Source: Ylistrum balloti (lineage: Eukaryota). Taken from it: a DNA stretch of 64,000 nucleotides. Every line of letters begins with the position of its first letter. Positions within the stretch are counted from its first letter, which is position 1. The DNA is taken from positions 992,001 through 1,056,000 of the forward strand of contig NW_026782111.1 of NCBI RefSeq assembly GCF_031769215.1, read 5' to 3'. The notes beneath the pieces were generated by a model. It was not told the origin of the DNA. It did not search any database and worked only from the letters and a program-made list of their open reading frames with translations. This document shows positions 9,693 to 57,450 of the stretch, piece after piece. The translations under genes were made by a program, and so were the position numbers.

Positions 9693-10010
9693 ATGAACTT
9701 TTCCCCTGTAGAAAACATGAACTATCTCCATGTAGGAATCATGAACCATCTCTCTGTAGAAATCATGAACCATGAACTTTTTCTCTGTAGGAATCATGAA
9801 CTATCTCTGTGTGGAAATCATGAACTTTTTCTCTGTAGAAGTCATGAATTATCTCCCTTTAGGAAACATGACCTCTCTCTCTGTAGGAATCATGACCTCT
9901 CTCTCTCTCTCTGTAGGAATCATGACCTCTTTCCCTGTATAAATCATGAACTATCTCCCTGTAGATAACATGAGCTTTCTCCCTATAGGAACCATGAACT
10001 TTTTTCTGTG
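9693..10010. repeat. 24-bp minisatellite (ATGAACTWTCTCYCTGTAGGAATC), about 13 units
   Basis: Periodicity is directly visible. Explains ORF 9693..9968. Confidence 0.93.
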
Positions 10011-13199: not shown

Positions 13200-13570
13200 C
13201 GTACGGGTACATTGGTAAAATAAACGAATGATGTCAAATAAATACAGTATAAGTTAAATAAGTATACCTTGGTGAACAATGTCGCTCAGACACATATGTT
13301 AAATAAGTATACTTTGGTGAACAATGTCGCTCAGACACATAGGTTAAATAAGTATACCTTGGTGAACAATGTCGCTCAGACACATATGTTAAATAAGTGA
13401 ACGATGCCGACGATAACTCGCGGATACCCTAGTAAAATACGTGTACAATGTCACACGGACACCGATTTTAAGATAAGTGAATGATGCCGACGATAACCTG
13501 CGGATACATTGGTAAAATAAGCTAATAATGTCATACAGGTACATAGGTTAAATAAGCGAATGATGTCGGG
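13200..13570. repeat. 45-bp tandem repeat (three near-identical copies from 13253) inside a degenerate composite array
   Basis: GTTAAATAAGTATACCTTGGTGAACAATGTCGCTCAGACACATA[T/G] is repeated, with related diverged units on both sides. Confidence 0.85.
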
Positions 13571-22392: not shown

Positions 22393-22732
22393 TTGTGCTA
22401 TGTTGTTCCAGTTTCTTGTAAGTCTGTGCTATGTTGTTCCCGTCTCTTGTAAGTCTGTGCTATGTTGTTCCCGTCTCTTGTAAGTCTGTGCTATGTTGTT
22501 CCAGTCTCTTGTAAGTCTGTGCTATGTTGTTCCAGTCTCTTTTAAGTCTGTGCTATGTTGTTCCAGTCTCTTGTAAGTCTGTGCTATGTTGTTCCCGTCT
22601 CTTTTAAGTCTGTGCTATGTTGTTCCAGTGTCTCTTGTAAGTCTGTGCTATGTTGTTCCCGTTTCTTGTAAATCTGTGATATGTTGTTCCCGTCTCTTGT
22701 AAGTCTGTGCTATGTTGTTCCAGTCTCTTGTA
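22393..22732. repeat. 31-bp minisatellite (GTCTCTTGTAAGTCTGTGCTATGTTGTTCC[C/A]), about 11 units
   Basis: Period 31 (e.g. 22441 and 22472). Confidence 0.95.
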
Positions 22733-25112: not shown

Positions 25113-25322
25113 AATTCAAAGTGGTCGAAAGGAGTGTCAAAATCTGGGAGGTGCTTTATATCCACATGTACTCGACATTCTTCGATGACCAGATACAAGA
25201 AAAGTATGATTTTTATCGAATAAGCACGAAAGCACCTCCCCATCTAGATTTTGACATTCCTATCGACCACTTTGGATTTTCCTCAGTCACTTCCTAGGTA
25301 TAAATGTAGGCCCTTAGCATCA
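25113..25322 (+). mobile_element. Truncated copy of the hammerhead-bearing repeat family with an inverted partial duplicate
   Basis: 25160-25322 matches the flank upstream of the HHRs at 44.87 and 56.94 kb and stops at GCATCA. 25113-25157 is the reverse complement of 25229-25278. Confidence 0.75.
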
Positions 25323-26523
25323 CAAGGAACTCACAAGCCATATATGAAAGCCTTACCCCTTACGTGCGATAATTATGGACAAGGTTAAAGTTGATAACAG
25401 ATAAACAGCTGAGACAAACAAACAAAAAAAAAAAAAAAAAAAAAAACGATCAGGGGGCATAAAAATAAGATTGAACGTTTTTTTTACAATACCCTTTTTT
25501 ATTTGAAAGATCTTACATAAAGCCTTACAGGTGAATTTTGCAGTAAAATAAATTTGTTGATCTCAGCCATATTTGTAGATTTGACGCTTGGGAAAACATA
25601 TCACCTCGCCCTGCCTTTTAAACGAAAAGAAAATAAACCACTGGAAACGGTAGCGTTTAAACACAGTGCGTCACAAGTAAACTTACTGATGCAAAAAACA
25701 TCATAGTGGAATTGAGGGAGATCGTGATAGGATAGCGGAATTCGCTTAAACACATTTATCCTGAACAATTTTCAGGTCAACCCCTCCGAATAAACTGTAC
25801 AAGATATGATCAAGTGTTATTTTGAGACGGATTCCGATTGCTTTGATTTATTGCTTAACTCAAAATTACCCAACACCAGGATTTCCAAGTTTTGTGTAGG
25901 ATTCAATTTTCATTTTCAACAATTGCATTTATTTTTAAAGTCTTTTATGTCTGAGGACTGCACATTCGAACTGTCTGACAAACGACCTCGCAAGAAACTG
26001 GATCTGATCCGACTTTCATTTATCATCACGAGAAATGTGGCATTTACGTGTTGAAGATATATTGCACGAATTGCGAAACACCAGTCTTAACAAGGACTTT
26101 GTTAATCCTTCACACACTGTGCACAGAAAACAACATCGATCATTTAATTCTCATCTTTTACACAAGGTTTGACATGTGAAGTGACGTTTAACATAACTAA
26201 ATAATCAAACGGAACACTATCGTTATAAGGTCACAAAGTACAAGCAATGCCAACAGCAAAATTCAAAGTTTAAATTTGAAATTGTGTTACATTTTGATTC
26301 GGAAAGTAACAAGATTCGTTCTAGATTGTGTAGCAAAAGGAAAAATTTGTAACAATTCAATTTTCCTTTGAAGTGGCAAAATAACCTTCTACACTTAATG
26401 ACAAATTTCCGCAGAAAAGTCGATTGGTAACATTTAAATGATACTTTTTGAGACATTTTTTACCGAAACAAAGCAAGTTTTTATTTACTTTTGTCCTTCA
26501 TTACGTAACCTTGGTTCAATACA

Positions 26524-26642
26524 CTGCTCGGTTGGAGAGAAATTCTCATTAGCTTGATCAGTGGAGCGTCAAACTAGTAAGCCGGGGTCCTGGGTTCGAA
26601 TCCTTGTGGCGGCATTCAAATAAATAATGACCTCTGTTACAA
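26524..26642 (+). mobile_element. tRNA-Thr(AGT)-derived SINE-like repeat
   Basis: GAGCGTCAAACTAGTAAGCCGGGGTCCTGGGTTCGAATCC resembles the tRNA-Thr(AGT) anticodon and T arms. B box at 26593-26603; no acceptor stem. Homologous to 44222-44343 (-). Confidence 0.75.
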
Positions 26643-27707
26643 CTAGATACAAAGATACCAGATACAAAGAATCTTTGCTCTATGTCGAATATACACAGTT
26701 TTTTGTATCAGCTGTTCAAAGTTTGTAGCTTGACAAGCATGTCCTTAATCAGAAAGACAAGATCACAGTGTACACACAACAAAAGTTTGATCTTAAGACA
26801 TTTCTAGTTGTAATCTGGTATATTACATTTGTGGATTAAGAGCTTGAGGTTATCAGATAACATTTTGTTCAATGCTGGGAAAGTTCTGCGGTCGTCAGAG
26901 CAATCTCATTGAAAAACATTCTGTTTCTCTGGAATATGCTGTTCGAAGTTTGGCACCAGAAAAAAGTGCGAGATATCTATGATTAAATATCACATTTTGG
27001 AATTAAATCCAGAGAGGGCAGAGAACTGAGTAAACCTCTACCTAACAAGACCTCTGATCTACGGCACCAAAAACAGCTACTCTAAAATAATTGTATTTGA
27101 GTTAATTTTTTTGTTTTATTCTAAAATGGAAAAAATGCATTAAAAACGAAGAAAACCGCAATCTTTTTTAATTCTCAAAGAGAGAGCGGTTTTGTAATAT
27201 AAATGAAATGTATAAAGGCAGCCTTGAATAATGACTTGTTTTAGTTTAGACACGGAGTCACATCAGGTACATTCACCTGTTGTGGATTTAATAACGTGAC
27301 TGAGTTGTTGAAATGGAATCAGACTGAACAAGTCATACATATCTGGTCATTCAAAGTTCAAACTGAAAAATGCAGTTAAAATCGAAATTAATGTTGCCGA
27401 CATGTTTACAAAATCGGGAAACAAACTCAGGCTTAAAAACAAGGACACAAATTGAAGAAAAAAATACATTTACGCATCAGTAAAACTTCAATAAATACTA
27501 AATTCAGTTCCATATTTGTTCCGAAAGGATTAGCGTCTTCAGCTTCATTGACGACACATGTGCATCTCACTCAGTAAAAGTATATAATATCGAATTCTCC
27601 AATGCGACCACACTTCAGAACAACGAATTCCCCAGGAAAACTTATGATATGACCATAGAACAACTATATATATATATATATCAGACTTAAGCCATTGGAT
27701 ATCTTAA

Positions 27708-27750
27708 CATCACTGACGAGTCCTAGAAGGACAAAACAGCTGAATGATAC
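27708..27750 (+). ncRNA. Degenerate minimal hammerhead ribozyme (probably inactive)
   Basis: CATCA CTGACGA GTCC TAGAA GGAC AAAA CAGCTGAA TGAT: G12 to A, and the cleavage triplet is GAA. Confidence 0.8.
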
Positions 27751-29331
27751 ATTATAATTCATAATTTTGTGATTTTATGTATCTATACATTTGTATTAAA
27801 AATGTTATTCACTTCTGTGTATTTTTTACTTAATAATACATATCATATTACTGTGAGGTCGTTAATTCTTTAGTTTTATTTTGGCGGTTCTAGTAATTTT
27901 GCGATATTCCATGTCAAAAAATGATGAATAGTTTGATATTGACATAGAATTTTAGTACCTGTGGATTTTGTGAGCGCTATATATCCATGTAAAGTGACAA
28001 AGAATTTATTCTTTGACATGCGTGATTTTGAAGTATGTGAAATAACTGAAGTATGACTATCATTTTCCATTGTCCTCAAGGATTTCACTTTGTCAGGTTG
28101 AATTTTTAACCAATTTAATTTCTAGATGTTTTCTGTGATGATTAATAATAAGGGGTCATATGAACTATCATGTTGTTTGGCATATCGTCCTTAAGTCAAG
28201 CTGGAAAAAACCGTCTCATAACAATGAGTGAAAATCTCGTTTCCTCGCGGAAATAGATAATCACAGGACGAAAATATGTTTTTTTTTTTCTGATTTTGAT
28301 TAAATTATTTTGAGGATTTGTCTACAACAGTCAAATTAATTTTGTTAGGCTTATTTGTCTTGTCTTGTGACGAAATTGGATAAGAAAGTCATTGGTTTTG
28401 TCTCCCCCATTCGTGAAATGGAATCACCCACCCACTCCCCTTTGTACCAACAATATTGTCCATGTTAACAGTCGGCGTCCCTTAAAAACTTGTCGCGGAG
28501 AATTTATTGTGTCTAGACCTAATGACAGGCATTGGTTACAACTCGCGTATTTTTATACCTTGCCGGTCTCGTGTATAAGGATAGTCTGTTCGACTCCCAG
28601 GGGAGACAACTCCTCGTGAATAAAGATCCAACGCTGCCGGAAGTTGAATTAAAGAACCAATATTAGAAAAGCTATCGTTTAAAGGGTATACTTTAAAAAC
28701 ACTACGGTCTCAAAGACCCGATCATTTTAGAGAGAAAATTATAAAACGACTCCATTTAATGGACTTTTTATGGTGTAGAATCTAACAAAATAGGATTGGA
28801 AATACAATTATTAAGAAAGATTTGAAAGGTCAGCGGAGTTAGTGTGAGAACAATATGCCGTCTTGTCGATTTCCCTCAACACCACAAAGCAATGGGATTT
28901 GGGGTCGATATTTACATTCACGTCTTAAGTACTTTATCTTCGTCGATGTGTGTATGTGTTAAGTTGTAAACAGTCATCTACGGAACCTTTTCATGGATGT
29001 TTGTCTTGGTAACTTGTGTATGTCTGACATGGATGTTTATTTTCCTTGGAGAGGAAAACTGGGGTGTAACAGTACTGAAGGAACACATGGGTTGTTCGAG
29101 CTGAATACTGCGATAATATCATACACATAGGTCATTTTTACAGAGAGTTAATAGATTTTTCACATAATGTAGATAAATTTAATTTTCATGTACTTTGTGA
29201 AGGTTTAGTGCATATAGATTTAATAGAATTCTTCTTTTTCCATGAAGATTATTTTAAATAGTATTTATATATTTATCTTCTATACTTTGTATATTCCTAT
29301 AGTGTATTCTGTATGCTACATATATATGTTA

Positions 29332-29659
29332 CAGTAAGATTGTGAAATCACTAAAACACTCAGTGAATTTGTGAAATCCCTAATTCACTTAGTAATTTCA
29401 CGAAATCACTAAAATCTTTAAAGATTTCCTGCAATTACTGAAAAAAATACTGTTGTATTACACAAATTTTTGAATTATAATTATAATTATAATTTAAGGC
29501 AAAGGACAGCCAGGGATTTCGTGTAATAACTGTGAAGCATCGTTCCAGTTATTACAGGAAATCCCTAAAGATTTCAGTGATTTCGTGAAATTACTAAGTG
29601 AATGAATTCACTGAAAGTTTCAGTGATTTCACGAAATCCCTGATTTCGCAATCTTACTG
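29332..29659. mobile_element. Tc1/mariner-type MITE or foldback element with ~110-bp imperfect TIRs and TA flanks
   Basis: TA|CAGTAAGATT...AATCTTACTG|TA. The arms share CACTTAGTAATTTCACGAAATCACT in inverted orientation, around a central (AATTAT)n. Confidence 0.85.
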
Positions 29660-29736
29660 TAACTCACACAAATATATATACTACTACTACTACTACTACT
29701 ATATATGTATGTGTGTGTTTGGTGTGATTTATTCTC

Positions 29737-29772
<36 letters not shown>
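29660..29772. repeat. (TAC)n and (TG)n microsatellites
   Basis: Read directly from the sequence. Confidence 0.95.
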
Positions 29773-29774
<2 letters not shown>

Positions 29775-31809
29775 ATGTTGGATATGGAGCCAATGAAAGG
29801 AGACCATCAGGAGAAGGTTGTCTGTGCTCTGAGAGATAGAAAAATATGTGGCAACTCATAGAGAAGAGAGTTGAAAAGGAAATTAAATGTTGTCATTCAA
29901 TTGTAGATAAAGGAGTGAAAGTAACGGAATAGAAATAGACCGAGAAAAAAGTGCGTTTCTCATAATTTCCCGGACCATGAGCATGCCACGACCGTCGGTC
30001 TCACTACTTTCAAGAATCATGGTTTTTGCGTAATCTAATTGCGTATATCATTAAAGTATTTTGCCCAAAATCAGCAAATTTGTATCATAATTCATGGTTC
30101 TTAGTGATAAAAGCTAATTATTTCGTGCTATACATGCATAAAAAAACGTCGACGAGATCAAAATTATCTGCAACTGTGATCACCATTGGCGGAAATGTTC
30201 TGTAAGTGAAAGTTATATGTTTTCAATGTTCAAAACCATCTGCTCGTGGTAAGACTTGGTTGAAAGCCAGGATCGTCGTTATTGTAGCCCTTAACTCCAT
30301 AGAAAGCCGAGACGCTTGACGAGAAATGGACATTTAGTTTACTTTGAAGAAAGTAAGCGAATGCTATGTCTGATAAAAATTAATCGGTAAAATCAAATGA
30401 ATTCCCCACGCTCCTGATCAACCGGTTATAATATCCGTTTCTTTTCTTTTGTAAATCGGATTGTCTGGTGTGAGATTAAATTTAAAGTACACGGGAATGT
30501 AGTTTCCATTCATGGACCTACCATATCGGATTGACATACGTACTCTCCTCATATTCAAATGTTTGTTAGTTTTGCAGAGCTTATCGCTTCCCTGTAGCAG
30601 CTGGTGATTTTTTCTCTGAACATCTTGCGGGAGGTTCGTTGCATGCCAACCAGGGCAATCACTGACTGTGCTTTCAAGACCTCGTCTTAAAATAAACGAT
30701 TAAAATAAATATTCCCAACGAGATTGGAATACAGCCGTTGTGTTGCGGTACTCTGCTAAAGCAATCCATTTCACAACAGTAATGATAAAATTCAATTATA
30801 ACTATATCTACAGATTTAGTTTCGGCGTCAGATTTTGGAATTTAAGTAGATAAGAATTCAGTTTATAATGTGGATAGCTAATTTTCAACAATTAAAGCCG
30901 CGATTTCCTGTCCAAGAAACGATATAAAGACGCTTTCGCCGTGGTTAAATTAGTTTTGGTTTTAATTATATTTTTTCTAAATGATGCAAAATTTGTTGCC
31001 AAACATTTTATTGCAAACCGACTGAGCGTCGTTATCACTAATACACGTTCCATGGCGATCATCTATTGACCAGTAATACAAACTCTAGGGCTGTTATCTG
31101 TGTTTAAGAAGTGAAAAGCTCTTAACAAATCCTTTATCGTCTGTATTGATTTTTTGGTATCATTTCCTGGTATTGAGCCACGCCCCCTCCGCCCACTTCA
31201 TCTGAAGCGGTCACGTGATATTTGTATTTTTAGTGTCCTGGTTACGGCGTTTATCCGTGAAGATGTACTGCTATAAGTCTTAATAATTTTCAGTTTTCCA
31301 ATACGGCAAACCGGATTTGTATATGGCTATGTTTCAATGTAAATTAAATAGAACTGCAAAGAAAAAAGAATATGCTGACAACTGTAAACAATAAATTAAT
31401 AAAAAAATCTAAAAAAAAATATAGATAAGTAAAAGATAAAAAAATAAAAAGATTACAAACACGTAAGCAAAAATCAAATTTCGAACTTTAAAAGTTTTCA
31501 ACGTTCAAAAGATGATATAAGAGAAGATATCAACGATGACGAATGAAAGAAATGAAAAAAAAAGTATGATAAGACCGGATGTTTCCATAGATCTGAAATT
31601 GTAATAAACACGGATCCATTTCGAGAACATGCTTTGATCGACCCATTTATGGGTTGCCGTTTATTTTCATGAAGCAGAAAACGATTGCCTTTCTGGAACA
31701 TCTGGTTCTACTCTCCTTGTAAGTTTTCGAAAAAATCCTTCCCTTTGTCTATACTTCGGTATTGTCAAGTTGATAAGAAGTTAAGGTTTTATTCACACGT
31801 TGTTAAACA

Positions 31810-32008
31810 TTACTTTTGATCAATATAACAGTCAATGATAGTCACACGAACTGCTTCGACACGTGAGAAGCTCCTGGCAGTCTGAAAGCTTCTGATTTCT
31901 GGAAGCTGATCACTGGACTTGTAGCGAAAACTGGCACCAGCCGTTTGTGTGTTTGTGATACCATGAAACATATAGGCCTCCTGACTGGCGGTACACTCTG
32001 ACTGGTTC
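31810..32008 (-). CDS. Candidate last coding exon (4) of an unrecognised minus-strand gene
   Basis: Acceptor TATATTCTACAG, open to TAA at 31812-31810, with AATAAA at 31793-31788. The reading frame is uncertain (see findings). Confidence 0.5.
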
Positions 32009-32142
32009 CTGTAGAATATATATCAGTATCAAAGAGGGGTTTGAAAGGAATATTGACGTCTTTGTCTTTCTGTAAAACAAGCGCGTTGTGGATTTGAATT
32101 ACATCATTTAACACTCAACGTGTATTGATAACAGTATCTTAC

Positions 32143-32239
32143 CTTACTGAGGAATTTTGGACCACCTTTGATGGCGCTCCAAGGCGACTCGGGACGTCCT
32201 TTGTCGTCACTGCCGGTCTGGACATTCTGCAAAATCTCA
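32143..32239 (-). CDS. Candidate exon 3 (97 nt) of the minus-strand gene
   Basis: Acceptor TGTTTTTTCAG and donor AAG|GTAAGA; GC-rich; followed by a 134-nt GT-AG intron to exon 4. Confidence 0.65.
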
Positions 32240-33870
32240 CTGAAAAAACATAATAATCACATTAAGAAATGTATGTTGAAATGAGTTATTTTGATCGAAA
32301 CAATTGATTTTGTATTTAAAAAAACCTTACACGATAAAAAATATATAAAATTTAATTATTTTGGTTGTAAATCTTTCCTGATTTTATTAATTATACCTGT
32401 TTTCGGAGAAGGCCATCAAGGATAACCATCTGTCGTTTTCTATTTTATTGTTTGCCTATAGAGTCAGCGTCAATAAAGCGCTTTGATTTCAGGCGAAGTA
32501 ATGAGGAAAGCCTCATGCGTATCAAGAATTGGCTACAAGTAGTACACTATTTCTAAATTATCAATGTGAATGCAGGTTCCGTTGTAGAAAGAACAGGCGA
32601 ACATATTTATTGGTATATAATATCATTTTAACTTTATATGGAATAAGTTAATTCTGGCTGAAAGGAATCAATGCAAGATTTAGATTTATTTTGTATTATA
32701 ACTGAATTAATTATTGAATTAGTAGAGTTTAAACTACGTTGATTCTACCTCGGAGCAAATAATTTGACACAATTTCCGTCCAGACCCTACATCAGAGGGT
32801 AAGACCTCTCCCCCATATTTGTTTGTTTTTGCACCTCCCTAGCCGATAAAACAGATGACACTTACCTTTCTGGAACACATGGTCTTATTCCTTTTGAAAT
32901 AATTCTACACATAAATTTTTCGGGTTTTTTTTAATGTGTTGTCAAAGATTAATCGTATTTGAGTTCGAATTAAGAATCTGTTGACATGTCGATAATTCAT
33001 TTTTGGATTCAAACTATGATAAACCATATCTTATGCTGTTATTTATGAAGAAAATGTTCAAAAAGATTTATGATCCACGCATAATAGTAACAGGAACATG
33101 ATTGTAAAATAGACGGTGGGAAGAAAACTTTAAACGGGTTTTCTATATTCTCGGAGAGAGATATCGAATGCAAATGCGTTTTTGGCAGTTATAGTATTCT
33201 CAAATGACTCCTAATTCAAACTTTGGGTAGCTACATTACTATCATCTGTTAAAATCCCATTTATATTAACATGCAAAAATCAACAATTTCGATTGCTACA
33301 GTGCAAATGTAATTATATATTATCATATCAGAAATGAAGTAATTTTGCTGTAACCGTGGAATTACAGACAAAAATGATTTTGAAATTTTGATAATAATTT
33401 TCTATCTGTAAATATCATTAGAGTTGGAAAGCTTGCGATTAAAATGTTCACGTGCACTTTATTTAACCACACAGTTATGATAATACATGGGATGTTTGGT
33501 GTTGTTCGTTTATGACCCATATTTATTCAGTCAGTTTTAAAAGCCGATAAAAGGCTTGTACTCTTTGTAGTAATAAAGTACCGTTTCCAAATGAAGCCGG
33601 CTTGACTTTACTGCACTTGGAAGCTAAGAGCTACATACTGTGGTAATTATAACGTGACTTAGATTACATAAACCGTGTCAATGGTATGACATAATCACTT
33701 ACTAGTTCTGAATTCATTCCATATCATGCCAAATGTCGGTCAACGTTTTGCAACTGTTTAAATACATATGGAATCAGTTTTCACCCAAAAATTTAAAAAC
33801 AAAATACATGTGATGTGGAATAAAAAAAATAAAGAAATTTGTGAATAAAGAGACAACTTTAAATTCTTAC

Positions 33871-33979
33871 TCCAAACTTTCTTGCTGACGTCACCGAGAG
33901 CTCTCGATAGTCTGTGTTTATTTTCCTCGCTATTGAGATTGACGTTAGATGGTGTATTAACGTTACGGAGTAAGGCAGC
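33871..33979 (-). CDS. Candidate exon 2 (109 nt; AALLRNVNTPSNVNLNSEENKHRLSRALGDVSKKVW)
   Basis: Acceptor GGATTTTTTCAG and donor GGA|GTAAGA. Overlaps ORF 33758..34009. Confidence 0.6.
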
Positions 33980-34217
33980 CTGAAAAAATCCGTCTCTGTA
34001 TCCTTTCATTTATCATTTTAGGATCGGATATTTGTTTTGTCCTTAGAGACATGCTTGGTGATTTGTTTCTATGTTAATCAGGTCATGTATATAGGTATTT
34101 AATTAGAAATGTTTTTGTTGACTATCAGCATTAATGCTACGTCGACGTAAAAAGACTTGTAGTGACGTAGAATGACTTGCAGTTACGTAAAAGACACTGA
34201 TATATGATGTTACTTAC

Positions 34218-34283
34218 TTGATCTGTTAGGAAGCAGATAAAAGTTGGTGGTACAACACCAGGGATGGGTTTATAGACAGTCAT
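34218..34283 (-). CDS. Candidate exon 1 (MTVYKPIPGVVPPTFICFLTDQ)
   Basis: AAAACATGA start context and CAA|GTAAGT donor, phase 0, compatible with exon 2. Confidence 0.5.
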
Positions 34284-34379
34284 GTTTTAAGGTCATTGCT
34301 CTCGCGGACAAATTAGCCTGGTATGTTTATGTAGATACAATATTGGATGTAGGTAAACAGCTCCCAGATCGTGACTGTA

Positions 34380-34480
34380 GTCACGTGTTAAGTAACCAAT
34401 GCCAACACAGTACACAAATATGACGTCAGGTTTCTAAAGGGACGAGAACTGCGCAGCGGTCAACAATCAAGCGGTAAGTC
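34380..34480. promoter_or_regulatory. Candidate bidirectional promoter: E-box CACGTG (34382), CCAAT (34396), CRE TGACGTCA (34421), + strand donor G|GTAAGT (34474)
   Basis: Motif cluster ~100 bp upstream of the minus-strand ATG. Confidence 0.45.
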
Positions 34481-34830
34481 AACAGAAATATTTGCCAAAA
34501 TGTTTGACCTTGCTTCAATAACACAATATGGACTCTGTGATGTTATGACTGGTTCTCTGTGTAGTCTACGATCCAAATATATATTCGGGAATGTGCTGAC
34601 TACATGCTTAATACGAAATATAAATATGATATATATAACAAAAACACTTATACGTCGTTTTTATTAACACATACAATATTGCTTTGTTACCTTTTATTCA
34701 ATTTCAACTTTTGTACTTGTAACAACTACCAACATGTCAACAGAATCATAATCCAAATTCAATAAAATTATATCAAAATATGAATAAAAGAAAAATTTAC
34801 ACGGATACTCCAGAACAAATTAAAATGATA

Positions 34831-34895
34831 ATAAGACCAAGTGTTCCAGAAGAGAAAGTGTCTTCTGCTTTATGGACGACACCCACCATGTAAAT
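34831..34895 (+). repeat. Dispersed repeat family (TAAGACC..TGTTCCAGAA.GG..TCTGCTTTAT)
   Basis: Related copies at ~31670-31710 (-), 32845-32890 (-), 50028-50080 (+) and 61290-61350 (+). Confidence 0.65.
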
Positions 34896-34937
34896 ATTGG
34901 TCATTCCAAGCAATGTCACGTCCTCAAATCAAGGTAT

Positions 34938-36120
34938 ACAACAAAGGAACCAAAAGACAAACTAATGAGCATCAAACACGTCCAGCTTCATACCGTACAA
35001 CAGAACCAAAAGACAAACTAATGAGCATCAAACACGTCCAGCTTCATACCGTACAACAGAACCAAAAGACAAACTAATGAGCATCAAACACGTCCAGCTT
35101 CATACCGTACAACAGAACCAAAAGACAAACTAATGAGCATCAAACCCGTCCAGCTTCATATCGCACAACTGAACCAACAGACAAACTAATGAGTATCAAA
35201 CATGTCCAGCTTCATATCACACAACGGAACCAACAGACAAACTAATGAGTATCAAACATGTCCAGCTTCATACCGTACAACAGAACCAAAAGACAAACTA
35301 ATGAGTATCAAACACGTCCAGCTTTATATCGCACAACTGAACCAGCAGACAAACTAATGAGTATCAAACACGTCCAGCTTCATACCGTACAACAGAACCA
35401 AAAGACAAACTAATGAGCATCAAACACGTCCAGCTTTATATCGCACAACTGAACCAACAGACAAACTAATGAGCATCAAACACGTCCAGCTTCATACCGT
35501 ACAACAGAACCAAAAGACAAACTAATGAGTATCAAACACGTCCAGCTTCATATCGCACAACTGAACCAACAGACAAACTAATGAGTATCAAACACGTCCA
35601 GCTTCATATCGCACTACTGAACCAACAGACAAACTAATGAGCATCAAACACGTCAAGCTTCATACCGTACAACAGAACCAAAAGACAAACTAATGAGTAT
35701 CAAACACGTCCAGCTTCATATCGCACAACTGAACCAACAGACAAACTAATGAGTATCAAACACGTCCAGCTTCATACCGTACAACAGAACCAAAAGACAA
35801 ACTAATGAGTATCAAACACGTCCAGCTTCATACCGTACAACAGAACCAACAGACAAACTAATGAGCATAAAACACGTCCAGCTTCATATCGCACAACTGA
35901 ACCAACAGACAAACTAATGAGCATCAAACACGTCCAGCTTCATACCGTACAACAGAACCAAAAGACAAACTAATGAGCATCAAACACGTCCAGCTTCATA
36001 CCGTACACAGAACCAAAAGACAAACTAATGAGCATCAAACACGTCCAGCTTCATACCGTACAACAGAACCAACAGACAAACTAATGAGCATCAAACACGT
36101 CCAGCTTCATATCGTACAAA
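34938..36120. repeat. 56-bp satellite, about 21 units, with two interspersed variants
   Basis: GACAAACTAATGAG recurs at 34956, 35012, 35068 and onward (period 56). Confidence 0.97.
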
Positions 36121-36560
36121 GAAATGAAATATTTCTCAATGAGACCACGGCGACGACCGTAAAACGTCCCAATAAGTTTAAATAGCCTGCATCTTTTAAA
36201 CTCTGTGACTAATTACTTAAGATGGAGTAATCACATGGAACCTTCATGTCACCAGAATGCGGGATCATTATACAATTGTTACTCTACGGTCGTATTTGTG
36301 TATTTTTCATGATGTTTTTTCTACCCTTTCTTTTAAATTTGTGAAATATGACACTTCAACAGTTTCTTGTTTGATGCCATTGTTATATGCCTATGTCATA
36401 ATATTGATATTTTTCGCTCATTCTTCTTTATGATCGTAAAAAATATCAATTGACTGTCATTTTCGATAAATAGAAGATTGTGCAAAGAGGCATGAGTGTA
36501 AAGCACTTGTCAATACAAATTTAGCATGAAATACAGAAGAGCCAAATAATGAATTAAACT

Positions 36561-36604
36561 GCATATCACAGCTGCTACTTTCTTCGAGGACTCGTTAGTG
36601 ATAC
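36561..36604 (-). ncRNA. Degenerate hammerhead copy with family flanks
   Basis: Minus strand: GTTTCACAACTTTGTCCCTCA GTATCA CTAACGA GTCC TCGAA GAAAGTAG CAGCTGTG ATATGC AGTTTAATTC. Confidence 0.7.
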
Positions 36605-38009
36605 TGAGGGACAAAGTTGTGAAACGTAGTAGACAACTCAGAAAAATGAAAATTAATCAAAAGAAAAGTAAAGTTCTAGGTGGAAAGGTGCACTAGCCCC
36701 ATAATCAAATAATTGTTATGAATTTTTTATACATCAGGTAATTTTAGAACTGTGTCAAGCACATAGGTATATTCACCAAGAATTGATATATACATTATAC
36801 TTATCAAATATTAATTAATTGTTTATCGTCAACATTTGTCGAGGAGATTCTCAAAAACGAAATATATCCTGAACAACTCGAGACGCATAGTTTGGCTAAG
36901 TTATGGATTGAATAATGCTGGTATTTGTTGCATATTGATGTGATAAATGCTTGAATGAAAATCGATGTATTCTACTTTCGGTTTATTTGAATGAAACTTA
37001 ATAATACAATATCGGCATATTTCATTTGGATTTGATATGTCAGAAATTAATATGCTGAAGAGTGTTGTTGTTCCTGTAATCAACATAAACTGCGGTGACA
37101 ATAGATTCTTTCATTGATTTCACATGAATCAAGGCAAGACACGTGAAAAGTCGTGGATCTGGAGACGTAGAGGAAATTGAATATCGATCTATGTTTTGGT
37201 CTTATGCAATAAACTGTAAATTACACACTGGGTACCATAAAGCAAGGAATAGTATAATATTGCCTCTATATACATATCGAGCAACAAGCATCAAGGTCAA
37301 AGAATGGCATTTTCAATACGAGATAGCAAAATTATAGGCGATGAAAATAAGAGAATACAGCCAGTAAACAAAATCGTAACTCTTACCAAAAATCGAAGAT
37401 GAAACTTGGCAATAAGTCGCCTTCGGCCATTCACCCGAAGAATCAGGCTCTTGGAGGAACAGTCTCAGTGTAGGGAATGAAGTACGAAACATGAACACCT
37501 GATCTTAGGGGAAACACAAATTGAAAACTAACGATAGAAGAATTGAAAGCATCACTATTGTAATACAGTTTTTTGGCAAGTTGTTCTGTTAAGGTTTAAG
37601 TACGTAGATATGAAGTTTAGTGCCTCTTGCAGACGAGTTTTGGTGTTCTTGGTTTCAACGTAAGATGGAAGGGATGGAAGATAAGTTTACATTCAGCATA
37701 GACTATGGTCTTGCTGAAGACAACTTGTCTGTAGATAAAGTGATGCAGAATTTGTACTAAAGATATAAGATTCAATAGCACTTTTCTATACAACTTTGAC
37801 TTTGATACCGTAGGGAAAAATAATTATGGAAACTTCATTATACAGTTGTTTTGTCCTATTTTGTCCTAAAGTAAATTTCTCAAATATTAAGTGAAGGATT
37901 ACATCTAATTTTACAACATTCTTAAACTGTCTTAGTTAATTTGATTGGTCAGTGTAAATATTTTTTCGATGATACCACGCTTGTAATTGTTCTTGTCTAT
38001 GTTGGAAGA

Positions 38010-38113
38010 GTGTACAAAAGACACACAAGTGAAAAGTGCCTTTTAATGCAAATTATATAAGATACAGTTAAACAATCAATTGAATATCATCACAAGGCTG
38101 TTTCGTCCTTCCA
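38010..38113 (-). mobile_element. 5'-truncated hammerhead-family copy (3' half of the HHR plus downstream flank)
   Basis: Minus strand: GAAGGACGAAACAGCCTTGTGATG, then a flank matching the TTCACTT..TTTGTAC downstream consensus. Confidence 0.6.
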
Positions 38114-39198
38114 TAACGAAATATTTACACTTACACAGTCTTATTACTGTGCAACATTACCAGATTAAAATGTTTAACATACTAGTATGGAAACATTGAC
38201 CTTTGAACCTGCGTATGAAAATGTTACAGGAACTACTTATGCCAAAAACATGGATTTTTTAAAAAACATTTTAACGTAAAAGGGTGATGTTATTTTCTAA
38301 GAAATGAAATATGTAAATAGAATTTAAAAACATAATCAAATAATACACCATGAATATTTTTTTATAAAAGTCAAAAAAAGGTAATAAGAACCCGCTATGG
38401 ATCGCTTTCACATTTTGTTGTCTGCAGCGTCGACGCTGTTAACAACGTCGGTATCAAAACGTATGAAAGCGGTGACTTACAGCAAGTGATATGTAAAATT
38501 CTTCATCGGAACGAATGAACAACTTCAACAGCTCTGATGAGAAAGGTTTAAGCATAAAAGATGAAGACATTAATCAGATTAAATATGATAATCCGTAAAA
38601 ATGTTTCTGTAATACTTAAAACCGAACCTTTATATCGCCGCGGACGAAAATGTTCAGTTTGTTGTGAAGAGTCAGCAGTGGCTGTTCTTCTAATTAAACC
38701 TCCTCCCACCAATGACCGACTTTTCCAGAGTGATTACGTCACGTACTTACAAGGATTGCTCTACAGTTGATTTTGATGAAAAGACACAGATGTGTTAATA
38801 TAGGGATAGGAATTTTATTTTATGTTAACTATGCTTTTATGGAGCGATTCCTCTACGGATATATTCTAGAGGAAGCGCTTAATAAATAACATTTATGACA
38901 CTTCATATGCAAAATTGATAGAAATCTATTTTCAGTAAAGCAATCGAGAAGGGGTGTTCGTGGTTAAGAAAGTGTGAAAACTGTTTACAGTTAAGCAAAT
39001 TATAAAACGGTGTCTGCAGTAGGACAAATGATAAAAATGTGTGGGCAGTTAGACAAATGTTAAAGATCTGTTCGCAGTGAGGTAAGCTGTGCAAATGTAA
39101 TACTGATATTAAAATAAATATATATAAATATACACAAATTAATTCCTTTAAACATGAACTTTGAGTGATGTGTAGTAGAACAAGTTATGAACTAAAAT

Positions 39199-39242
39199 GC
39201 AGCCTACAGCTGTTTTGTCCTTCTAGGACTCGTCAGTGATGA
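39199..39242 (-). ncRNA. Near-complete minimal hammerhead with a G12 to A change
   Basis: Minus strand: CATCA CTGACGA GTCC TAGAA GGAC AAAA CAGCTGTA GGCTGC. The family upstream flank extends to ~39430. Confidence 0.85.
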
Positions 39243-39492
39243 TAAGGACCTAAGTCATGAAACCTAGGAGGTGACTCTGGAAAACCCAAAGTGATCGAGT
39301 AGATATGCCAAAATCTTAGAGGAGCTGTTCGAATGAAAGAGACGTGCAGATTATGGCAAACGTCTGTAACTAAAAAGTCCACGAGTAATGTTGAGCACCT
39401 GCAGTCTCGAAGAATGTACAAATGACACGCATGTAAAGAACACATTTCAACACACACAAGAACTAGATACAGTACAGCCAAATAATTAAACT

Positions 39493-39524
39493 GCCTCATA
39501 CATCTGTTTCAGCCTTCTAGGATT
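39493..39524 (-). ncRNA. Degenerate hammerhead (CUGA core lost), one family monomer upstream of the 39.2-kb copy
   Basis: Minus strand: ATCC TAGAA GGCT GAAA CAGATGTA TGAGGC AGTTTAATT. Confidence 0.65.
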
Positions 39525-52610: not shown

Positions 52611-54207
52611 TATAATTGGTCAGTTACTCTTGATATGTTTACCTCGGCCTCTTTCTTTAATTTGTAAATTATTGACAAAGTCTAACATGAAATTGACTGC
52701 AATCATATCCAGTAAACTATTTCTTTTCGTATTGATCAATCACATAAACTGTTTAAACCAAACAAACGATCTACTAATATTACTCTTAATATTAAGTTAA
52801 CGACAGCTGGTGATTGTAACAAAACTAATGTATGTGTATTACGTGAGAGGGCGTTACTGTCAAAGAATGTCTGCCCATTACATGCTTGATATAAATACAA
52901 TTTTATATGATTTTATAGTCTCTGGAAATGTTTAAAGCTATTTTACGTCCACATAACTATCATGTTTAAGATAAAAATGTCGTTTTTATGGCTAAAACGA
53001 TAAAACATGAAGTAAATGATAATGAAATCTAGTTGTTAAGGGTAAGAATTTAGACAAACTACCAATATCTTTAACCGCATATCGTTACAGTTTTACAGTA
53101 AGTTTACTATCGGGCAAAATATATAAACCTTTTCTAGATACTTAGATTTAATCTCTGGACAGATCGATTCCGGCTCCAGAAGTCTGACTTTCCAACGTTT
53201 GTACCATAAAATGTTACTATAAAAAGTGAAGTCACTCCAAATGGAAAGCTTTAATTAATAATCTCTACACATTCACTGACTGAATAAGAAGCCAGTGGGT
53301 AAAGCAATGATTCCGAATGATGTTAGGCGTTAGAACCGGAAGTAGCAGATGTACAATCGATTATTATCGATTTTACATTTTGGTGTGTTATTTCTATGTC
53401 AACTAATTGCTCAGTGATCGAACATACAAATCAATACCAAATACTGTCCAACTTGCTATTTCAGCTCAAACGACTACACATTGTCCATGGCGAAATGGAT
53501 GTATTGGTTTTTTTTCGTTCGTTATTTAATGGTATGGTCGTATTAAACCTGGAAATGGAGCTTCCGGGAACTTTTATTTAGTACGCTTTCTGGCATGGTC
53601 CGATGCGACTTCCGGTCCATTCATCAACATTTGCATATATATGTGTATTACTTTAAAACGTTTTAATGGATAACTGCAGGGACAATAGCCATTAATTTTC
53701 TATAATGTTATATATAATGCAGCTATATTTTGTGACGAAATTGATTAAACATAATGATGTCAATTGAAGATCAAATCAGCCGTTGTGGTTTGTTCTGCGC
53801 TGTGTGAATGACAATGTATTGAGCGTCAGCTGCTTGGTGCTAATCTATAAAGTAATGACGACATCTGTCTGTTGACGTACGAGGATAGTGTGTTAAGGTA
53901 GATGGCCCGATGAAAAGGGACATATACAATAGTGATAATAAGAATGAAATGGGAAGATCGATTAGAACACTTTTAATGTGACAGGAATATTGTCGATAAA
54001 ATTAAAAAAAGAAAATAGATAAAGAAAATATTTTTTGATAAGTTCATTGAAATATGATAATGCAAAATTGCTGACGGATAATATTGGTGGGAAATCGAGC
54101 CGAGAGGTTTTTATTCTTATTTTTTATGACATTATATATTAAAATTTTATCATTTTGTGTCAGCTAATTTCTATCCCTTAACCCTCTGCTCTATCACCAC
54201 GCACTGG

Positions 54208-54248
54208 GTCACTGACGTCACGGAAGGACGAAACAGCTGTATGATGCA
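54208..54248 (+). ncRNA. Hammerhead copy with a perfect 3' half and a damaged core/stem II
   Basis: GTCA CTGACG TCACGGAA GGAC GAAA CAGCTGTA TGATGC AG. Confidence 0.75.
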
Positions 54249-54561
54249 GTTTTAACGTTTTAGTATTCATACAATATACCATATATACCACTAAGTTTGT
54301 CGTAAAATGCGCTACTCACCAACGCGTCCTAAATACCATTTCTGATATATTTAAAAACAAACATCTTCCAAAGTGAAACACTGAGATTTTGGCGTTTCTT
54401 GTGAATAGTACACATTTCACACAAGATAATACCTTTCTAAACCAGATTAGAAAAAAAGGTACATTCATTGTTTGGCTCTACTTTTTCTAACTCTAAATTA
54501 ATTTCCATTAAAAATTGTTTCTTTTGTACAATGTAATACAATACTAATTATTGGATGAAAA

Positions 54562-54608
54562 ACTGCATCCCTACGCTTAATTCGTCCATTTAGGACTCGT
54601 CAATGATT
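54562..54608 (-). ncRNA. Degenerate hammerhead copy facing the 54.2-kb copy
   Basis: Minus strand: ATCA TTGACGA GTCC TAAAT GGAC GAAT TAAGCGTA GGGATGC AGTT. Confidence 0.7.
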
Positions 54609-55326
54609 CTAAAGTCTTTGAGTGTGGAAAATTAGGAGTCGACTTTTAATAATAAAATTGGTTGAAATTATTATTAAAATCAGAATGGATGATTCATCTA
54701 ATTTCATTTCATTAACTACTTATCCGATCCCTCAATCAATCTCCCCGCCCCACCCACCAACACACACCTTCAACGCCTACCACCCTCTGTGTTGCTTTCA
54801 CTTTTCTCTCAGTGATGTTGATGTAACGCTGATGTATGTAATTTATTGTATATATTTAGTTTCGGTTCAGAGATTGGTCATGATTTAGAAGAGGTAAGGC
54901 AGAGTGAGTGGCATTCGTTAGGGTTTTTTTTTTTGTTGTTAAAAAATACATAAATGTGTTTCGCTTCGTATGTAAAATAAAGTGGAAATATTATTCTGAA
55001 TCAAAGAAACACCACATTCCAAAACTATCACGTTTTGCCATTTGTTGCTAATCGATACATAGAGTACATTTCAACATCAAACCTGTATATCTACTTAAAA
55101 GATATAGAGAGTTGTAAAATAAACATTTCGGTAGAAACACATATCTCCCCTCAAATCTTAGCCTCGAAGGCAAAATGTCTTCCGATGGGGAGGAATGTGG
55201 AGTTAAATTACACGCCCGGCGTTTTAGTGCTAATGACTAGGGATGTTTCCCATAAACATTTCTTACTACTTCTTAATAGAGTAAGTATAGAACTGGGGAA
55301 TCAATGAGTTCTGAAAATAGGAAGAA

Positions 55327-55665
55327 CACGTGATCATTAAAGAGCACGTGATCAGTAAAGAACACGTGATCAGTGAATACCAAAATGAATAAGGGCACAT
55401 GATAATCGATTATCGAATGTGGTTATTACTGAAAAAAGTGAAAGATGAGATTTTCGATAAGATTATAAGGACACATTGGTTATCACGAATATGGATGACA
55501 CGTGATCATTGATTACTGATTGGCAAAACGACACGTGATTATGGCTTTTCGAAAGGAACACTGACACGAGATCTTTGATTATTTTCAGAAAACGTGTTAA
55601 TTGATAATCGAGTGCAAAATGGATGTGTTACATATTTAATCATGAAAAAGCATTAAAAACACGTG
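55327..55665. promoter_or_regulatory. Cluster of six CACGTG(AT) E-boxes, the first three at an 18-bp period
   Basis: CACGTG at 55327, 55345, 55363, 55499, 55532 and 55660. Confidence 0.55.
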
Positions 55666-55992
55666 ATTATTCCGAAGAAATGATAGAATTCCCGCGTGAG
55701 GTAAGTACTCCAGCGAGATGTGTATTCTAACGAGTAGTAAGTACTCCCACGAAATGACAGTACTTCAATGAACTTTGAGTAAAACCTATAAAAGTCACGT
55801 AATATAGTAGTTTGGAGTCCTTCATCAACACTTCATTATTATTAGCTAGAAATAGGTGGGGGTGGTTTGAGGCGAAAATACCTTCAGTGAGAATACTTTA
55901 TGAATGTGCCGCTAACACACGATTATAATGTACCACGTTACTGAGTAGAAGTAAGTTAAGGTTCTTATTTCGTACGACTTACATATTTAACA

Positions 55993-56072
55993 CTCCCCCC
56001 TCACAGCAACCTCCTCCCCCTCACAACCCCCCCCCCCCCCACCCCGCCTCACAACCCTCCCTCCCCGCCTCC
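55993..56072 (-). other. C-rich tract (G4 on the minus strand / i-motif potential)
   Basis: Multiple C-runs separated by TCACAA-like linkers. Confidence 0.6.
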
Positions 56073-56934
56073 CAATAAAACTATTCTGTATCTATGTGAA
56101 ACACATGAAAACATTTTGTATCCACGTTAATGTATGATGAAGTTTATAGACGAGATAATTGAAAATGATACCCATATCATATATTCTCTCAGTTCTGGTT
56201 TTTGCAAAAATGTTTGCCCACGCATTAAGTAGAAATAAATCCCTTCGAAAATAGGTTTTTTTTTACGGTAAGTGAAATAATTTCTTAAGAAAAAAAATCC
56301 TTTCTGATGATGGATATCTACATGTGGCTATATTCGCGTTAGAACGACAAGGAATTGTGTTTAAATATATCTCTTATATACATATCATATGTTTTGAGTT
56401 TTGTCGTATGACCTTATTAGCCGAATGGAAGAAATGGAAGATGAAAGGGAAAGCAAATATTTGAGTTAATTTTAGTGTGAAAGTGTTACCTGTTCTTGTT
56501 AATGAAATGAAATGAAATTTGATTTTCATCAACATGAAGAATACAAAAGTACATTTCATGTATACCTAAAGAGGATTAAATTTAGACAAACATGTTGTCC
56601 AATCCATTTGCTTTGCAATAAAAATCTTTTGAAATGAACTGAACAGAGGAAATGATCATCTGATACCTGATATAAAATGTGTTTGAATCTTTGAACGGAT
56701 AATTGAATACCTTCGTGTAGTGTCTGTAATGTAAACGAAAAACTACATTTGGTTCCGAGAACATTAAAAGATGGGTGACTGATTTAATGTTTCTGAAATC
56801 ATCCGGTATATGAAAATTGCAAAATTTATTGAACAAGGCATCGATGGTACTTACCAATCTAGATTTTGCTATTTCTTTCGATCACTTCGGATTGTCCTAT
56901 GTCGCCTCCCCAGGTTTCAAATGTTAAGCCCTTA

Positions 56935-57158
56935 GCGCCACTGACGAGTCCAAGAAGGACGAAACAGCTGTATGATGCAGCGTCACTGTCGAGTCCTAGA
57001 AGGACGAAACAGTTGTATGATGTAACATTACTGACGAGTCTGACGAGGACGAAAAAACTGTATGATGCAGCATCACTGACGAGTCCTAGAAGGACGAAAC
57101 AGCTGTATTATGTAGCATCACTGACGAGTCCTAGAAGGACGAAACAGCTGTATGATGT
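56935..57158 (+). ncRNA. Tandem array of five 45-nt minimal hammerhead ribozymes; unit 5 fully canonical
   Basis: CTG[A/T]CGA cores at 56941, 56986, 57031, 57076 and 57121. Unit 5 (57115-57158): stem I GCATCA/TGATGT, CTGACGA, stem II GTCC-TAGAA-GGAC, GAAA, palindromic ACAGCTGT, GTA triplet (cut 57152/57153). The family flank lies upstream from ~56800. Confidence 0.95.
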
Positions 57159-57450
57159 AGTTTAATTCATTGTTTAGTATTTCTCTGTTAGGGACTGGTT
57201 AGGGACAGAAGAGACCTCACAGACTCAGTAGCATGTTTCTCATTTATGTATAACTCTAGATATATATTAAATCGTGATTTTCACTTGTGTGTCCGTCCTT
57301 TGTGGAATCTTCAATAGAACATTCATTAAAGGCAACACTAACTGTCTGACACAGGTACAATTAGTGAATCGCCTTTCGTGATAACGATAAGGTAGATATG
57401 GCAAACATTCAATAAACAACCTGCATATGTTTCCGTGTTGCCAGAGAAAC

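What the first reader, a model, noticed from the sequence alone, without database searches (positions are those of the whole stretch)
25113..57180. Dense family of ~300-nt non-coding hammerhead retroelements (retrozyme or Penelope pseudo-LTR-like)
Seen: hammerhead motifs or remnants at ~27.7, 36.6, 38.1, 39.2, 39.5, 42.7, 43.2 (x5), 44.9, 45.5, 50.2, 54.2, 54.6 and 56.9 kb (x5), on both strands, plus a flank-only copy at 25.2 kb. They share an upstream flank (ATATGAAAATT...TCTAGATTTTG...TCGA[C/T]CACT...GTC[A/G]CC...AGGTTTCA...CCTTAGCATCA) and a downstream flank (AGTTTAATTCATT...TATTCACTT...TTTGTAC). No RT or GIY-YIG ORF is present in the window. Established: HHRs mark Penelope-like pseudo-LTRs and non-autonomous retrozymes. 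Inference: an old, high-copy non-autonomous family, at roughly one locus per 3 kb in this stretch and none noticed in the first 25 kb.
Basis: partly seen in the sequence, partly recalled or inferred. Interest (0 to 1): 0.75.

Follow-up and report, generated by a model that had tools for sequence, protein, structure and literature searches.

The report
Decayed hammerhead retrozyme family in scallop
This stretch is littered with dead copies of a short, non-coding jumping element that carries a self-cutting hammerhead RNA motif; it is a kind already described in molluscs and other animals, here with the motif sometimes repeated back-to-back.

Summary
Between 21,966 and 57,317 the window holds 17 independent loci of one repeat family, on both strands. 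None lies in the first 21.9 kb or the last 6.7 kb. The family is genome-wide, with at least 2,800-3,700 first-look candidates in a 648-Mb genome, apparently a scallop's.

The unit is about 389 nt and has no ORF. It carries one canonical type I hammerhead of 45 nt, or a head-to-tail array of 5 to 40 or more such units.

Insertions end at one fixed site about 90 nt 3' of the predicted cut site, without poly(A). Their 5' ends vary, and some copies exceed one unit. This is the anatomy of a non-LTR retrozyme (Cervera & de la Pena 2020), not of a pseudo-LTR around a Penelope gene. Four Penelope-like lineages with intact RT/GIY-YIG ORFs coexist but share no sequence with the family.

Copies are old, about 85% identical to consensus. 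They show no stem covariation among themselves, which fits neutral decay. A lake-metagenome repeat with the same core has three compensated helix I pairs.

All 30 arrays examined share one repeat phase, so they descend from one array-bearing source.

Expression and cleavage could not be tested.

The scan had already noted this family and its 45-nt arrays on other pieces of this genome.

The parts
21966..22110 (-). Decayed hammerhead plus 3' tail (unit 388 to 127)
   Evidence: nhmmer; unit inspection (core broken, 4/12 pairs)
25150..25323 (+). Upstream-flank-only copy (unit 221 to 7), with no hammerhead body or tail
27702..27829 (+). 5'-truncated copy: one hammerhead (GAAA core mutated) plus tail
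36473..36774 (-). 5'-truncated copy (unit 227 to 128) with a dead hammerhead
37750..37857 (-). Tail copy starting inside the hammerhead (unit 22 to 124)
38004..38112 (-). Tail copy starting inside the hammerhead (unit 19 to 129)
39130..39525 (-). More-than-unit copy: partial hammerhead, spacer with an internal deletion, second hammerhead, tail. The hammerheads are about 294 nt apart.
   Evidence: sequence
41840..41910 (-). Tail fragment
   Evidence: E 9e-7
42471..42849 (+). Copy of slightly more than one unit (unit 109 round to 131) with a dead hammerhead at 42741-42785
43212..43519 (+). Five hammerhead units (44-46 nt, all damaged) plus tail, with no upstream flank. It is truncated at the 5' end within the array.
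   Evidence: Rfam; sequence; TRF
44651..44996 (+). 5'-truncated copy (unit 181 to 132). The hammerhead core is intact but helix I is damaged.
   Evidence: (E 1.6e-58)
45440..45593 (-). Decayed hammerhead plus tail (unit 381 to 136)
50118..50395 (-). 5'-truncated copy (unit 251 to 128) with a dead hammerhead
51704..51811 (+). Tail copy starting inside the hammerhead (unit 20 to 124)
54207..54342 (+). Hammerhead remnant plus tail (unit 2 to 128)
54458..54534 (+). Separate tail fragment
54560..54646 (-). End of the upstream flank plus a dead hammerhead, no tail
56791..57317 (+). Upstream flank (unit 252 onward), five 45-nt hammerhead units at 56935-57159, and a tail interrupted by a 69-nt insertion at about 57180-57248. 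Units at 56935, 57070 and 57115 look intact.
   Evidence: Rfam; sequence; TRF

Best explanation
These are dead copies of a non-autonomous, non-LTR 'retrozyme'-type retroelement.

Shown: the source unit is about 389 nt of non-coding sequence. It holds one canonical type I hammerhead: helix I 6 bp, helix II 4 bp, helix III 2 bp closed by a palindromic loop. In one form of the element a head-to-tail array of 45-nt hammerhead units sits at that same position.

Inferred: the element is transcribed as a longer-than-unit or circular RNA. Reverse transcription starts at one fixed internal site about 90 nt 3' of the ribozyme cut site and runs back through the hammerhead and the spacer. It stops at variable points. 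This gives copies with a common 3' end, ragged 5' ends and sometimes more than one unit.

Inferred, not shown: the enzyme is borrowed from the autonomous Penelope-like elements that coexist in this genome.

Inferred from sequence: the single hammerhead should need a partner, because its helix III is too short. In arrays, neighbouring units can pair their 8-nt palindromes and complete each other.

After insertion the copies decayed neutrally. Arrays also changed length at the DNA level.
For: Family and anatomy:
- A profile built from genomic copies maps 17 loci in the window.
- The family has at least 2,798-3,718 first-look candidates genome-wide and about 1e5 rough hammerhead candidates.
- The unit closes from hammerhead to hammerhead in 371-405 nt in 10 of the 13 full-length copies found; the consensus is 389 nt.
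- GC is 40.6% and there is no stop-free stretch over 72 aa.

Ends of insertions:
- 46 of 63 elements end at unit 124-133, with the mode at 128-129. There is no poly(A) and the sequence beyond is unrelated.
- 5' ends are spread over the whole unit.

The hammerhead:
- The consensus has all core nucleotides and the three helices.
- A metagenomic 565-nt tandem repeat with the same core compensates three helix I pairs.
- The centroid fold of two adjacent units pairs the two helix III palindromes.

The arrays:
- Arrays share one phase. Internal units end GTA 179 times against GCA 13 times. Last units end GCA, and single hammerheads end GCA 22 times against GTA once.
- Some arrays lack the upstream flank, for example 43212-43519. 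This fits arrays being present in the copied RNA.

Possible helpers and published parallels:
- Four Penelope-like lineages with RT plus C-terminal GIY-YIG ORFs of 669-934 aa exist in the genome.
- A purified PLE starts reverse transcription internally, 85-92 nt 3' of its hammerhead cut site. Hammerhead cleavage is not needed for insertion in vitro (PMC11167929).
- Mollusc retrozymes of 350-390 bp are described in PMC7229834.
Against: - No RNA evidence.
- No target-site duplications were detectable, though at this divergence the exact-match test is weak.
- No sequence link to any of the 17 Penelope-like loci sampled, so the helper is inferred from co-occurrence and geometry only.
- No covariation within the family.
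- Individual monomers fold no better than shuffles (mean z -0.8). The consensus folds only moderately better (z -2.5, 63% paired), less rod-like than published retrozyme circles.
- No long tandem runs of the whole 389-nt unit were seen in the sample. Only partial dimers were found.
Confidence: 0.78

Rival explanations
1. The copies are solo or 5'-truncated pseudo-LTRs of an autonomous Penelope-like element, whose coding part is simply missing from these insertions.
For: Penelope-like elements carry a hammerhead once per tandem unit and leave 5'-truncated copies with a defined 3' 'tail' (PMC8557442; PMC11167929). Intact PLE ORFs exist in this genome.
Against: In at least 13 copies the sequence upstream of the flank leads back into the family's own tail and hammerhead within about 389 nt, not into an ORF. 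The family profile hits none of 17 PLE loci, except one unrelated nearby copy. The PLE hammerhead cores seen here are of the minimal type with a long helix II, unlike this canonical one.
Confidence: 0.07
2. It is a SINE-like element mobilised by a LINE (for example an R2/RLE-type element) rather than by a Penelope-like element. The hammerhead would be a passenger or a processing signal.
For: A fixed 3' end with 5' truncation is also the signature of LINE-driven target-primed reverse transcription. Earlier scan notes report LINE-type elements with hammerhead-like 3' ends in this genome. These are unchecked leads.
Against: There is no tRNA, 5S or 7SL-like head. There is no poly(A) or simple-repeat tail. 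More-than-unit copies and the roughly 90-nt distance from cut site to 3' end match the PLE pattern. No LINE 3' end was compared, so this is not excluded.
Confidence: 0.1
3. It is a satellite or minisatellite DNA spread by DNA-level processes (unequal exchange, extrachromosomal circles), not by reverse transcription. The hammerhead resemblance would be functionally irrelevant.
For: Hammerhead arrays behave as minisatellites. Lengths run from 5 to 40 or more units. Two assembly copies of one locus differ, with 12 and 15 units. Within-array identity (0.92) exceeds between-array identity (0.876). A tail-derived tandem array exists at C548.
Against: Thousands of dispersed single copies share a common 3' end and have ragged 5' ends in unrelated flanks, and the window shows no segmental duplication. 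These are not expected from DNA-level spread. The consensus is a complete hammerhead, and helix I is compensated in an unrelated repeat.
Confidence: 0.05

Closest known systems
Metazoan non-LTR retrozymes (Cervera & de la Pena 2020, PMC7229834), especially the 350-390-bp Mytilus galloprovincialis repeats
   Same: A non-coding unit of a few hundred nt (here 389) with one canonical type I hammerhead. GC is low. There are no LTRs and no ORF. Thousands of copies are present, in a bivalve, alongside autonomous Penelope-like elements.
   Different: Most copies here are dispersed, 5'-truncated single insertions rather than tandem multimers. A subset carries spacer-less 45-nt hammerhead arrays at the hammerhead position. 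Expression as circular RNA is untested. Homology to the mussel sequences could not be checked, because no sequence is held in the paper's text.
Penelope-like element pseudo-LTRs with hammerheads (Cervera & de la Pena 2014, PMC4209133; Frangieh et al. 2024, PMC11167929)
   Same: There is one hammerhead per repeat unit and more-than-unit copies occur. The 3' end is fixed at an internal site about 90 nt 3' of the cut site (85-92 nt in the anole element). There is no poly(A) and 5' truncation is common.
   Different: No RT/GIY-YIG ORF lies between the repeats. The hammerhead is canonical, not the minimal long-helix-II type seen next to this genome's PLE ORFs. No sequence similarity to the sampled PLEs was found.
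Short vertebrate non-LTR retrozyme families (Li, Clavereau & Pollet 2026 preprint, 10.64898/2026.07.22.740005)
   Same: That survey reports retrozyme consensus lengths down to 51 bp and up to 300 tandem units, and derives retrozymes from PLE pseudo-LTRs. Near-ribozyme-only repeats are therefore not unprecedented.
   Different: Here the 45-nt array is embedded inside a longer 389-nt mobile unit and shares one phase across loci. The taxon is a mollusc, not a vertebrate.
Dimer-dependent hammerheads of newt satellite 2 and avocado sunblotch viroid (Forster et al. 1988, as cited in PMC4209133)
   Same: Helix III is very short with a palindromic loop, so two motifs can pair into a double hammerhead.
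   Different: Here the partner can be the immediately adjacent 45-nt unit, not a copy hundreds of nt away. Activity is untested.

Membership tests
Hammerhead ribozyme, type I (Rfam RF00163) | Conserved catalytic core (CUGANGA, GAA, A15.1-U16.1, non-G at position 17) | tested here: met
   The family consensus and units at 56935, 57070 and 57115 have every core position. Most other window units are mutated.
Hammerhead ribozyme, type I (Rfam RF00163) | Score at or above the Rfam gathering threshold | tested here: met
   38.4 bits against a threshold of 34 at 43346-43435. Genome copies reach 41.6 bits. The cleanest single window unit scores 32.7, just below threshold.
Hammerhead ribozyme, type I (Rfam RF00163) | Three helices supported by compensatory change | tested here: inconclusive
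   Within the family there was 1 double change in 636 cells, no better than shuffles. Against a metagenomic repeat, 3 of 6 helix I pairs are compensated. Helices II and III were fixed by the search pattern, so they say nothing.
Hammerhead ribozyme, type I (Rfam RF00163) | Self-cleavage | not testable with these tools
   Needs in vitro transcription or RNA end mapping.
Metazoan non-LTR retrozyme | Non-coding repeat unit of about 170-400 nt with a type I hammerhead, no LTR and low GC | tested here: met
   389-nt consensus, GC 40.6%, longest open stretch 72 aa.
Metazoan non-LTR retrozyme | Head-to-tail (more-than-unit) genomic arrangement | tested here: met
   Copies span hammerhead to hammerhead, including window 39130-39525 and 42471-42849. 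Long multimers of the full unit were not seen in the sample.
Metazoan non-LTR retrozyme | Expressed as linear and circular RNA of unit length | not testable with these tools
Metazoan non-LTR retrozyme | Target-site duplications (when present, longer than 4 bp) | tested here: inconclusive
   The longest shared words at the two junctions match the shuffled control. Copies are too diverged for an exact-match test.
Penelope-like element pseudo-LTR | Repeats flank an RT plus GIY-YIG ORF | tested here: not met
   No PLE coding similarity in the window. The unit closes on itself. The family profile is absent from 17 PLE loci apart from one unrelated copy.
Penelope-like element pseudo-LTR | Fixed 3' end at an internal reverse-transcription start 3' of the hammerhead | tested here: met
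   3' ends cluster at unit 124-133, 86-95 nt past the cut site. The anole PLE figure is 85-92 nt. This shows the same geometry, not membership.
SINE | tRNA, 5S or 7SL-derived Pol III head and an A-rich or simple-repeat tail | tested here: not met
   No such Rfam or ARAGORN hits in the window. 3' ends lack A-rich or simple repeats.

The most novel reading that the evidence does not exclude
The array-bearing form may be a distinct, compact way of building a retrozyme. The mobile RNA itself would carry back-to-back 45-nt hammerheads. Their 8-nt palindromic helix III strands pair between neighbours, so a dimer-dependent ribozyme becomes a self-sufficient cis double hammerhead. Cleavage would then release 45-nt RNAs, the smallest possible hammerhead circles. 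The shared repeat phase of all 30 arrays would mean this form arose once and then transposed, rather than being ordinary minisatellite growth at each locus.
Probability: 0.2. Interest if true: 0.65.

Novelty: new member of a known kind. Interest (0 to 1): 0.4.

Why it matters
The finding adds a bivalve family, apparently a scallop's, to the animal retrozymes, with a clear anatomy. The 3' end is fixed about 90 nt past the ribozyme cut site and the 5' ends are ragged. 5' ends do not pile up at the cut site.

This pattern fits the internal-initiation mechanism recently shown for one Penelope-like element in vitro. It also suggests that ribozyme cleavage does not define the copied RNA's 5' end.

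The spacer-less hammerhead arrays offer a natural test of whether neighbouring ribozymes activate each other.

For genome annotation, one 389-nt model would mask many thousands of loci. Otherwise these read as scattered 'hammerhead hits' in introns and upstream regions of genes.

Tried and rejected
Nothing can be said about expression, cleavage ends or circles.
A planned look at 20 more PLE loci and at 30 unbiased tail-anchored copies was not possible.
- Stem covariation among 53 independent copies: none.
- Target-site duplications: no excess over control.
- Array-bearing copies as a separate subfamily by their upstream flanks: not supported. Identities were AA 0.738, SS 0.718 and AS 0.728 (permutation p=0.56).
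- Rod-like self-pairing of monomers: weak. Mean z was -0.8 for 10 copies and -2.5 for the consensus.
- Ancient internal duplication of the unit (a relic second hammerhead in the spacer): local alignment score 35 against 28.6+-5.3 for shuffles, not significant.
- 5' ends created by ribozyme cleavage: rejected. The 23 true junctions form a ladder from -4 to +57 across the hammerhead, with only one at the cut site.
- Sub-kb clustering of copies (homing into older copies): 4 of 16 gaps are under 450 bp against about 3 expected, which is not significant (my arithmetic coordinates).
- Local amplification: window copies are no closer to each other (67-78%) than to copies elsewhere.
- Similarity to the 3' region of a GIY-YIG locus (L021): this turned out to be an ordinary family copy lying nearby.
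- The mussel retrozyme sequence for a direct comparison is not held in the paper's text or supplement.
Full report
**Observation**

Rfam scans find type I hammerheads in the window. One is above the gathering score (43346-43435, 38.4 bits). Several type I and type III matches just below threshold tile two five-unit arrays at 43212-43435 and 56935-57159.

A profile HMM built from genomic copies of the family then maps 17 loci between 21,966 and 57,317.

The copies match each other only within the element, at 67-78% identity. No larger duplicated blocks carry them, so they are independent insertions. All 17 fall in 35.4 of the 64 kb (P=6e-4 under uniform placement).

In 87 kb of unrelated loci from the same genome the profile finds one copy. 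In about 130 kb of flanks of other family loci it finds nine. This stretch is therefore several-fold enriched, and I have no explanation for that.

The window holds no PLE coding remnant and no tRNA. The only clear gene is a single-exon GPCR ORF at 59308-60534.

**Family and anatomy**

The window is C254:992001-1056000 of a 648.5-Mb assembly. Earlier scan notes call it a scallop, which I did not verify.

Searching the genome with the 56.9-kb copy or with a whole unit gives 2,798 and 3,718 first-look candidates. Both flanks align in dozens of scored loci. An Rfam hammerhead search gives about 1e5 rough candidates.

In L010, and in at least 13 other copies, the sequence runs hammerhead, tail, spacer, hammerhead in 371-405 nt. 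The majority consensus is 389 nt, GC 40.6%, with no open stretch above 72 aa.

In unit coordinates the hammerhead is 1-45 and the predicted cut follows position 38. Insertions end at 124-133 in 46 of 63 elements, with the mode at 128-129. There is no poly(A) and the DNA beyond is unrelated.

5' ends are spread over the whole unit. Many copies are only the last roughly 100 nt, and some exceed one unit. This is the footprint of target-primed reverse transcription from a fixed internal start on an RNA that is longer than one unit or circular.

**The ribozyme**

The consensus 45-mer has all core nucleotides. Helix I is 6 bp and helix II is 4 bp with a 5-nt loop. Helix III is 2 bp closed by a 4-nt loop, and the whole helix III segment is an 8-nt palindrome. 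This is the 'canonical metazoan type I' layout, which is thought to need a second copy to form a stable helix III (PMC4209133).

Among 53 independent copies there is no covariation: 89% of cells are paired, there is one double change, and shuffles do as well. I read this as neutral decay from one master sequence. The hammerhead is 91% identical to consensus against 84-86% for the flanks. In the window only the units at 56935, 57070 and 57115 still look intact.

A scan of metagenome contigs with a pattern fixing the core and helices II and III found a 565-nt tandem repeat in three lake-metagenome contigs. Its flanks are unrelated. Its helix I differs from the scallop's at three pairs, all compensated. 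That is modest independent support for helix I. It says nothing about helices II and III.

**The arrays**

At the hammerhead position many loci carry 5 to 40 or more spacer-less units.

In 30 arrays the internal units end GTA (179 against 13 GCA). The last unit mostly ends GCA (16 of 30; GTA 6, ACA 4). Single hammerheads end GCA (22 against 1). Arrays are preceded by TTA. This means every array is a repeat of the same 45-nt segment, beginning two bases before the hammerhead. Independent duplications at each locus would give mixed phases.

So the arrays descend from one array-bearing source and moved as part of the element. Arrays that lack any upstream flank fit this reading (43212-43519).

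The upstream flanks of array-bearing and single-hammerhead copies are not differentiated, so both forms belong to one burst. Arrays also changed later at the DNA level. Units are more alike within arrays than between them (0.92 against 0.876). Two assembly copies of one locus have 12 and 15 units (L009 and L017).

In the predicted centroid fold of two adjacent units, the two palindromes pair with each other. Rfam's type III model also scores across unit junctions. Neighbours may therefore complete each other. This is a prediction only.

**Who moves it**

The genome has at least four diverged Penelope-like lineages with intact ORFs of 669-934 aa. Each carries RT followed by GIY-YIG and lies near a minimal hammerhead core with a long helix II, downstream of the ORF in three of the four loci. 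None of 17 such loci shares sequence with the family, so the link is circumstantial.

The geometry does match published PLE behaviour. A purified anole PLE starts reverse transcription internally, 85-92 nt 3' of its hammerhead cut site, which explains the PLE 'tail'. It also does not need hammerhead cleavage (PMC11167929). Here the 3' ends sit 86-95 nt past the cut site.

The 23 true 5' junctions that fall in the hammerhead region form a ladder from -4 to +57, with no pile-up at the cut site. This suggests stalling in a structured region rather than ribozyme-made 5' ends. A 2026 preprint argues that animal retrozymes derive from PLE pseudo-LTRs, and reports consensus lengths down to 51 bp.

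**Comparison and verdict**

The closest described things are the non-LTR retrozymes of animals. These include 350-390-bp repeats in the mussel that are abundantly expressed as circular RNA (PMC7229834).

This family meets the structural criteria. Expression, circles and target-site duplications could not be established. It fails the defining test of a pseudo-LTR, which is a flanked RT/GIY-YIG ORF, and it fails the tests of a SINE.

I therefore file it as a new member of a known kind. The embedded, single-phase 45-nt hammerhead array is its one less ordinary feature. No paper in the searched library mentions hammerheads in scallops.

The scan had already noted the same arrays and dispersed family on other pieces of this genome. 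I used those notes as leads only.

Noticed in passing
window 59308-60534 (+): Single-exon 408-aa ORF of a rhodopsin-type GPCR (Pfam 7TM_GPCR_Srw 3.8e-36, 7tm_1 7e-15). The only array with intact-looking hammerheads (56935-57159) lies 2.1 kb upstream on the same strand. Whether it sits in a 5' intron of this gene was not tested.
   Followed up: partly
window 34947-36123; 48520-49401; 22394-22732; 1723-2354; 9693-10004; 13249-13565: Other tandem repeats unrelated to the hammerhead family: periods of 56 nt (21 copies), 70 nt (12.6 copies, with a strong C-over-G skew), 31 nt, 28/56/84 nt, 24 nt and 45/80 nt (TRF; composition).
   Followed up: no
window 57180-57248: A 69-nt insertion interrupts the tail of the 56.9-kb copy. 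The canonical tail resumes at about 57249.
   Followed up: partly
G000:C548:516472-517099: A tandem array (period about 72 nt, at least 9 units) made only of the last roughly 70 nt of the element's tail. This is a satellite born from the non-ribozyme part.
   Followed up: no
L009 (C959:113210-116576) and L017 (C702:897394-900691): The same locus is assembled twice, with identical flanks on both sides but 12 and 15 hammerhead units. This is either haplotigs or a recent duplication with a change in array length.
   Followed up: partly
L063 (C422:243000-252999) and further C422 hits at 240-262 kb: Head-to-tail array of a Penelope-like element with a 5.36-kb period. Each unit has a 755-aa RT/GIY-YIG ORF preceded by an overlapping 485-aa ORF, and a hammerhead-like core once per unit.
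   Followed up: partly
L068-L070 (lake metagenome contigs Ga0214193_1003621, Ga0007871_1026362, TBL_comb47_HYPODRAFT_10075177): A 565-nt tandem repeat of unknown organism carries a hammerhead with the same helices II and III and core as the scallop family, but a different, fully compensated helix I.
   Followed up: partly
family consensus, spacer about 115-140 nt 3' of the hammerhead: A roughly 25-nt stretch in the spacer resembles the 3' end of the hammerhead plus the first bases of the tail. This hints at a relic second ribozyme, but the whole-unit self-alignment is not significant.
   Followed up: yes
63 elements in window and loci L002-L062: 5' ends are about 3.5 times denser across the hammerhead (unit -4 to 57) than over the rest of the unit. 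The sample is small and partly biased by the search queries.
   Followed up: partly
   Followed up: no
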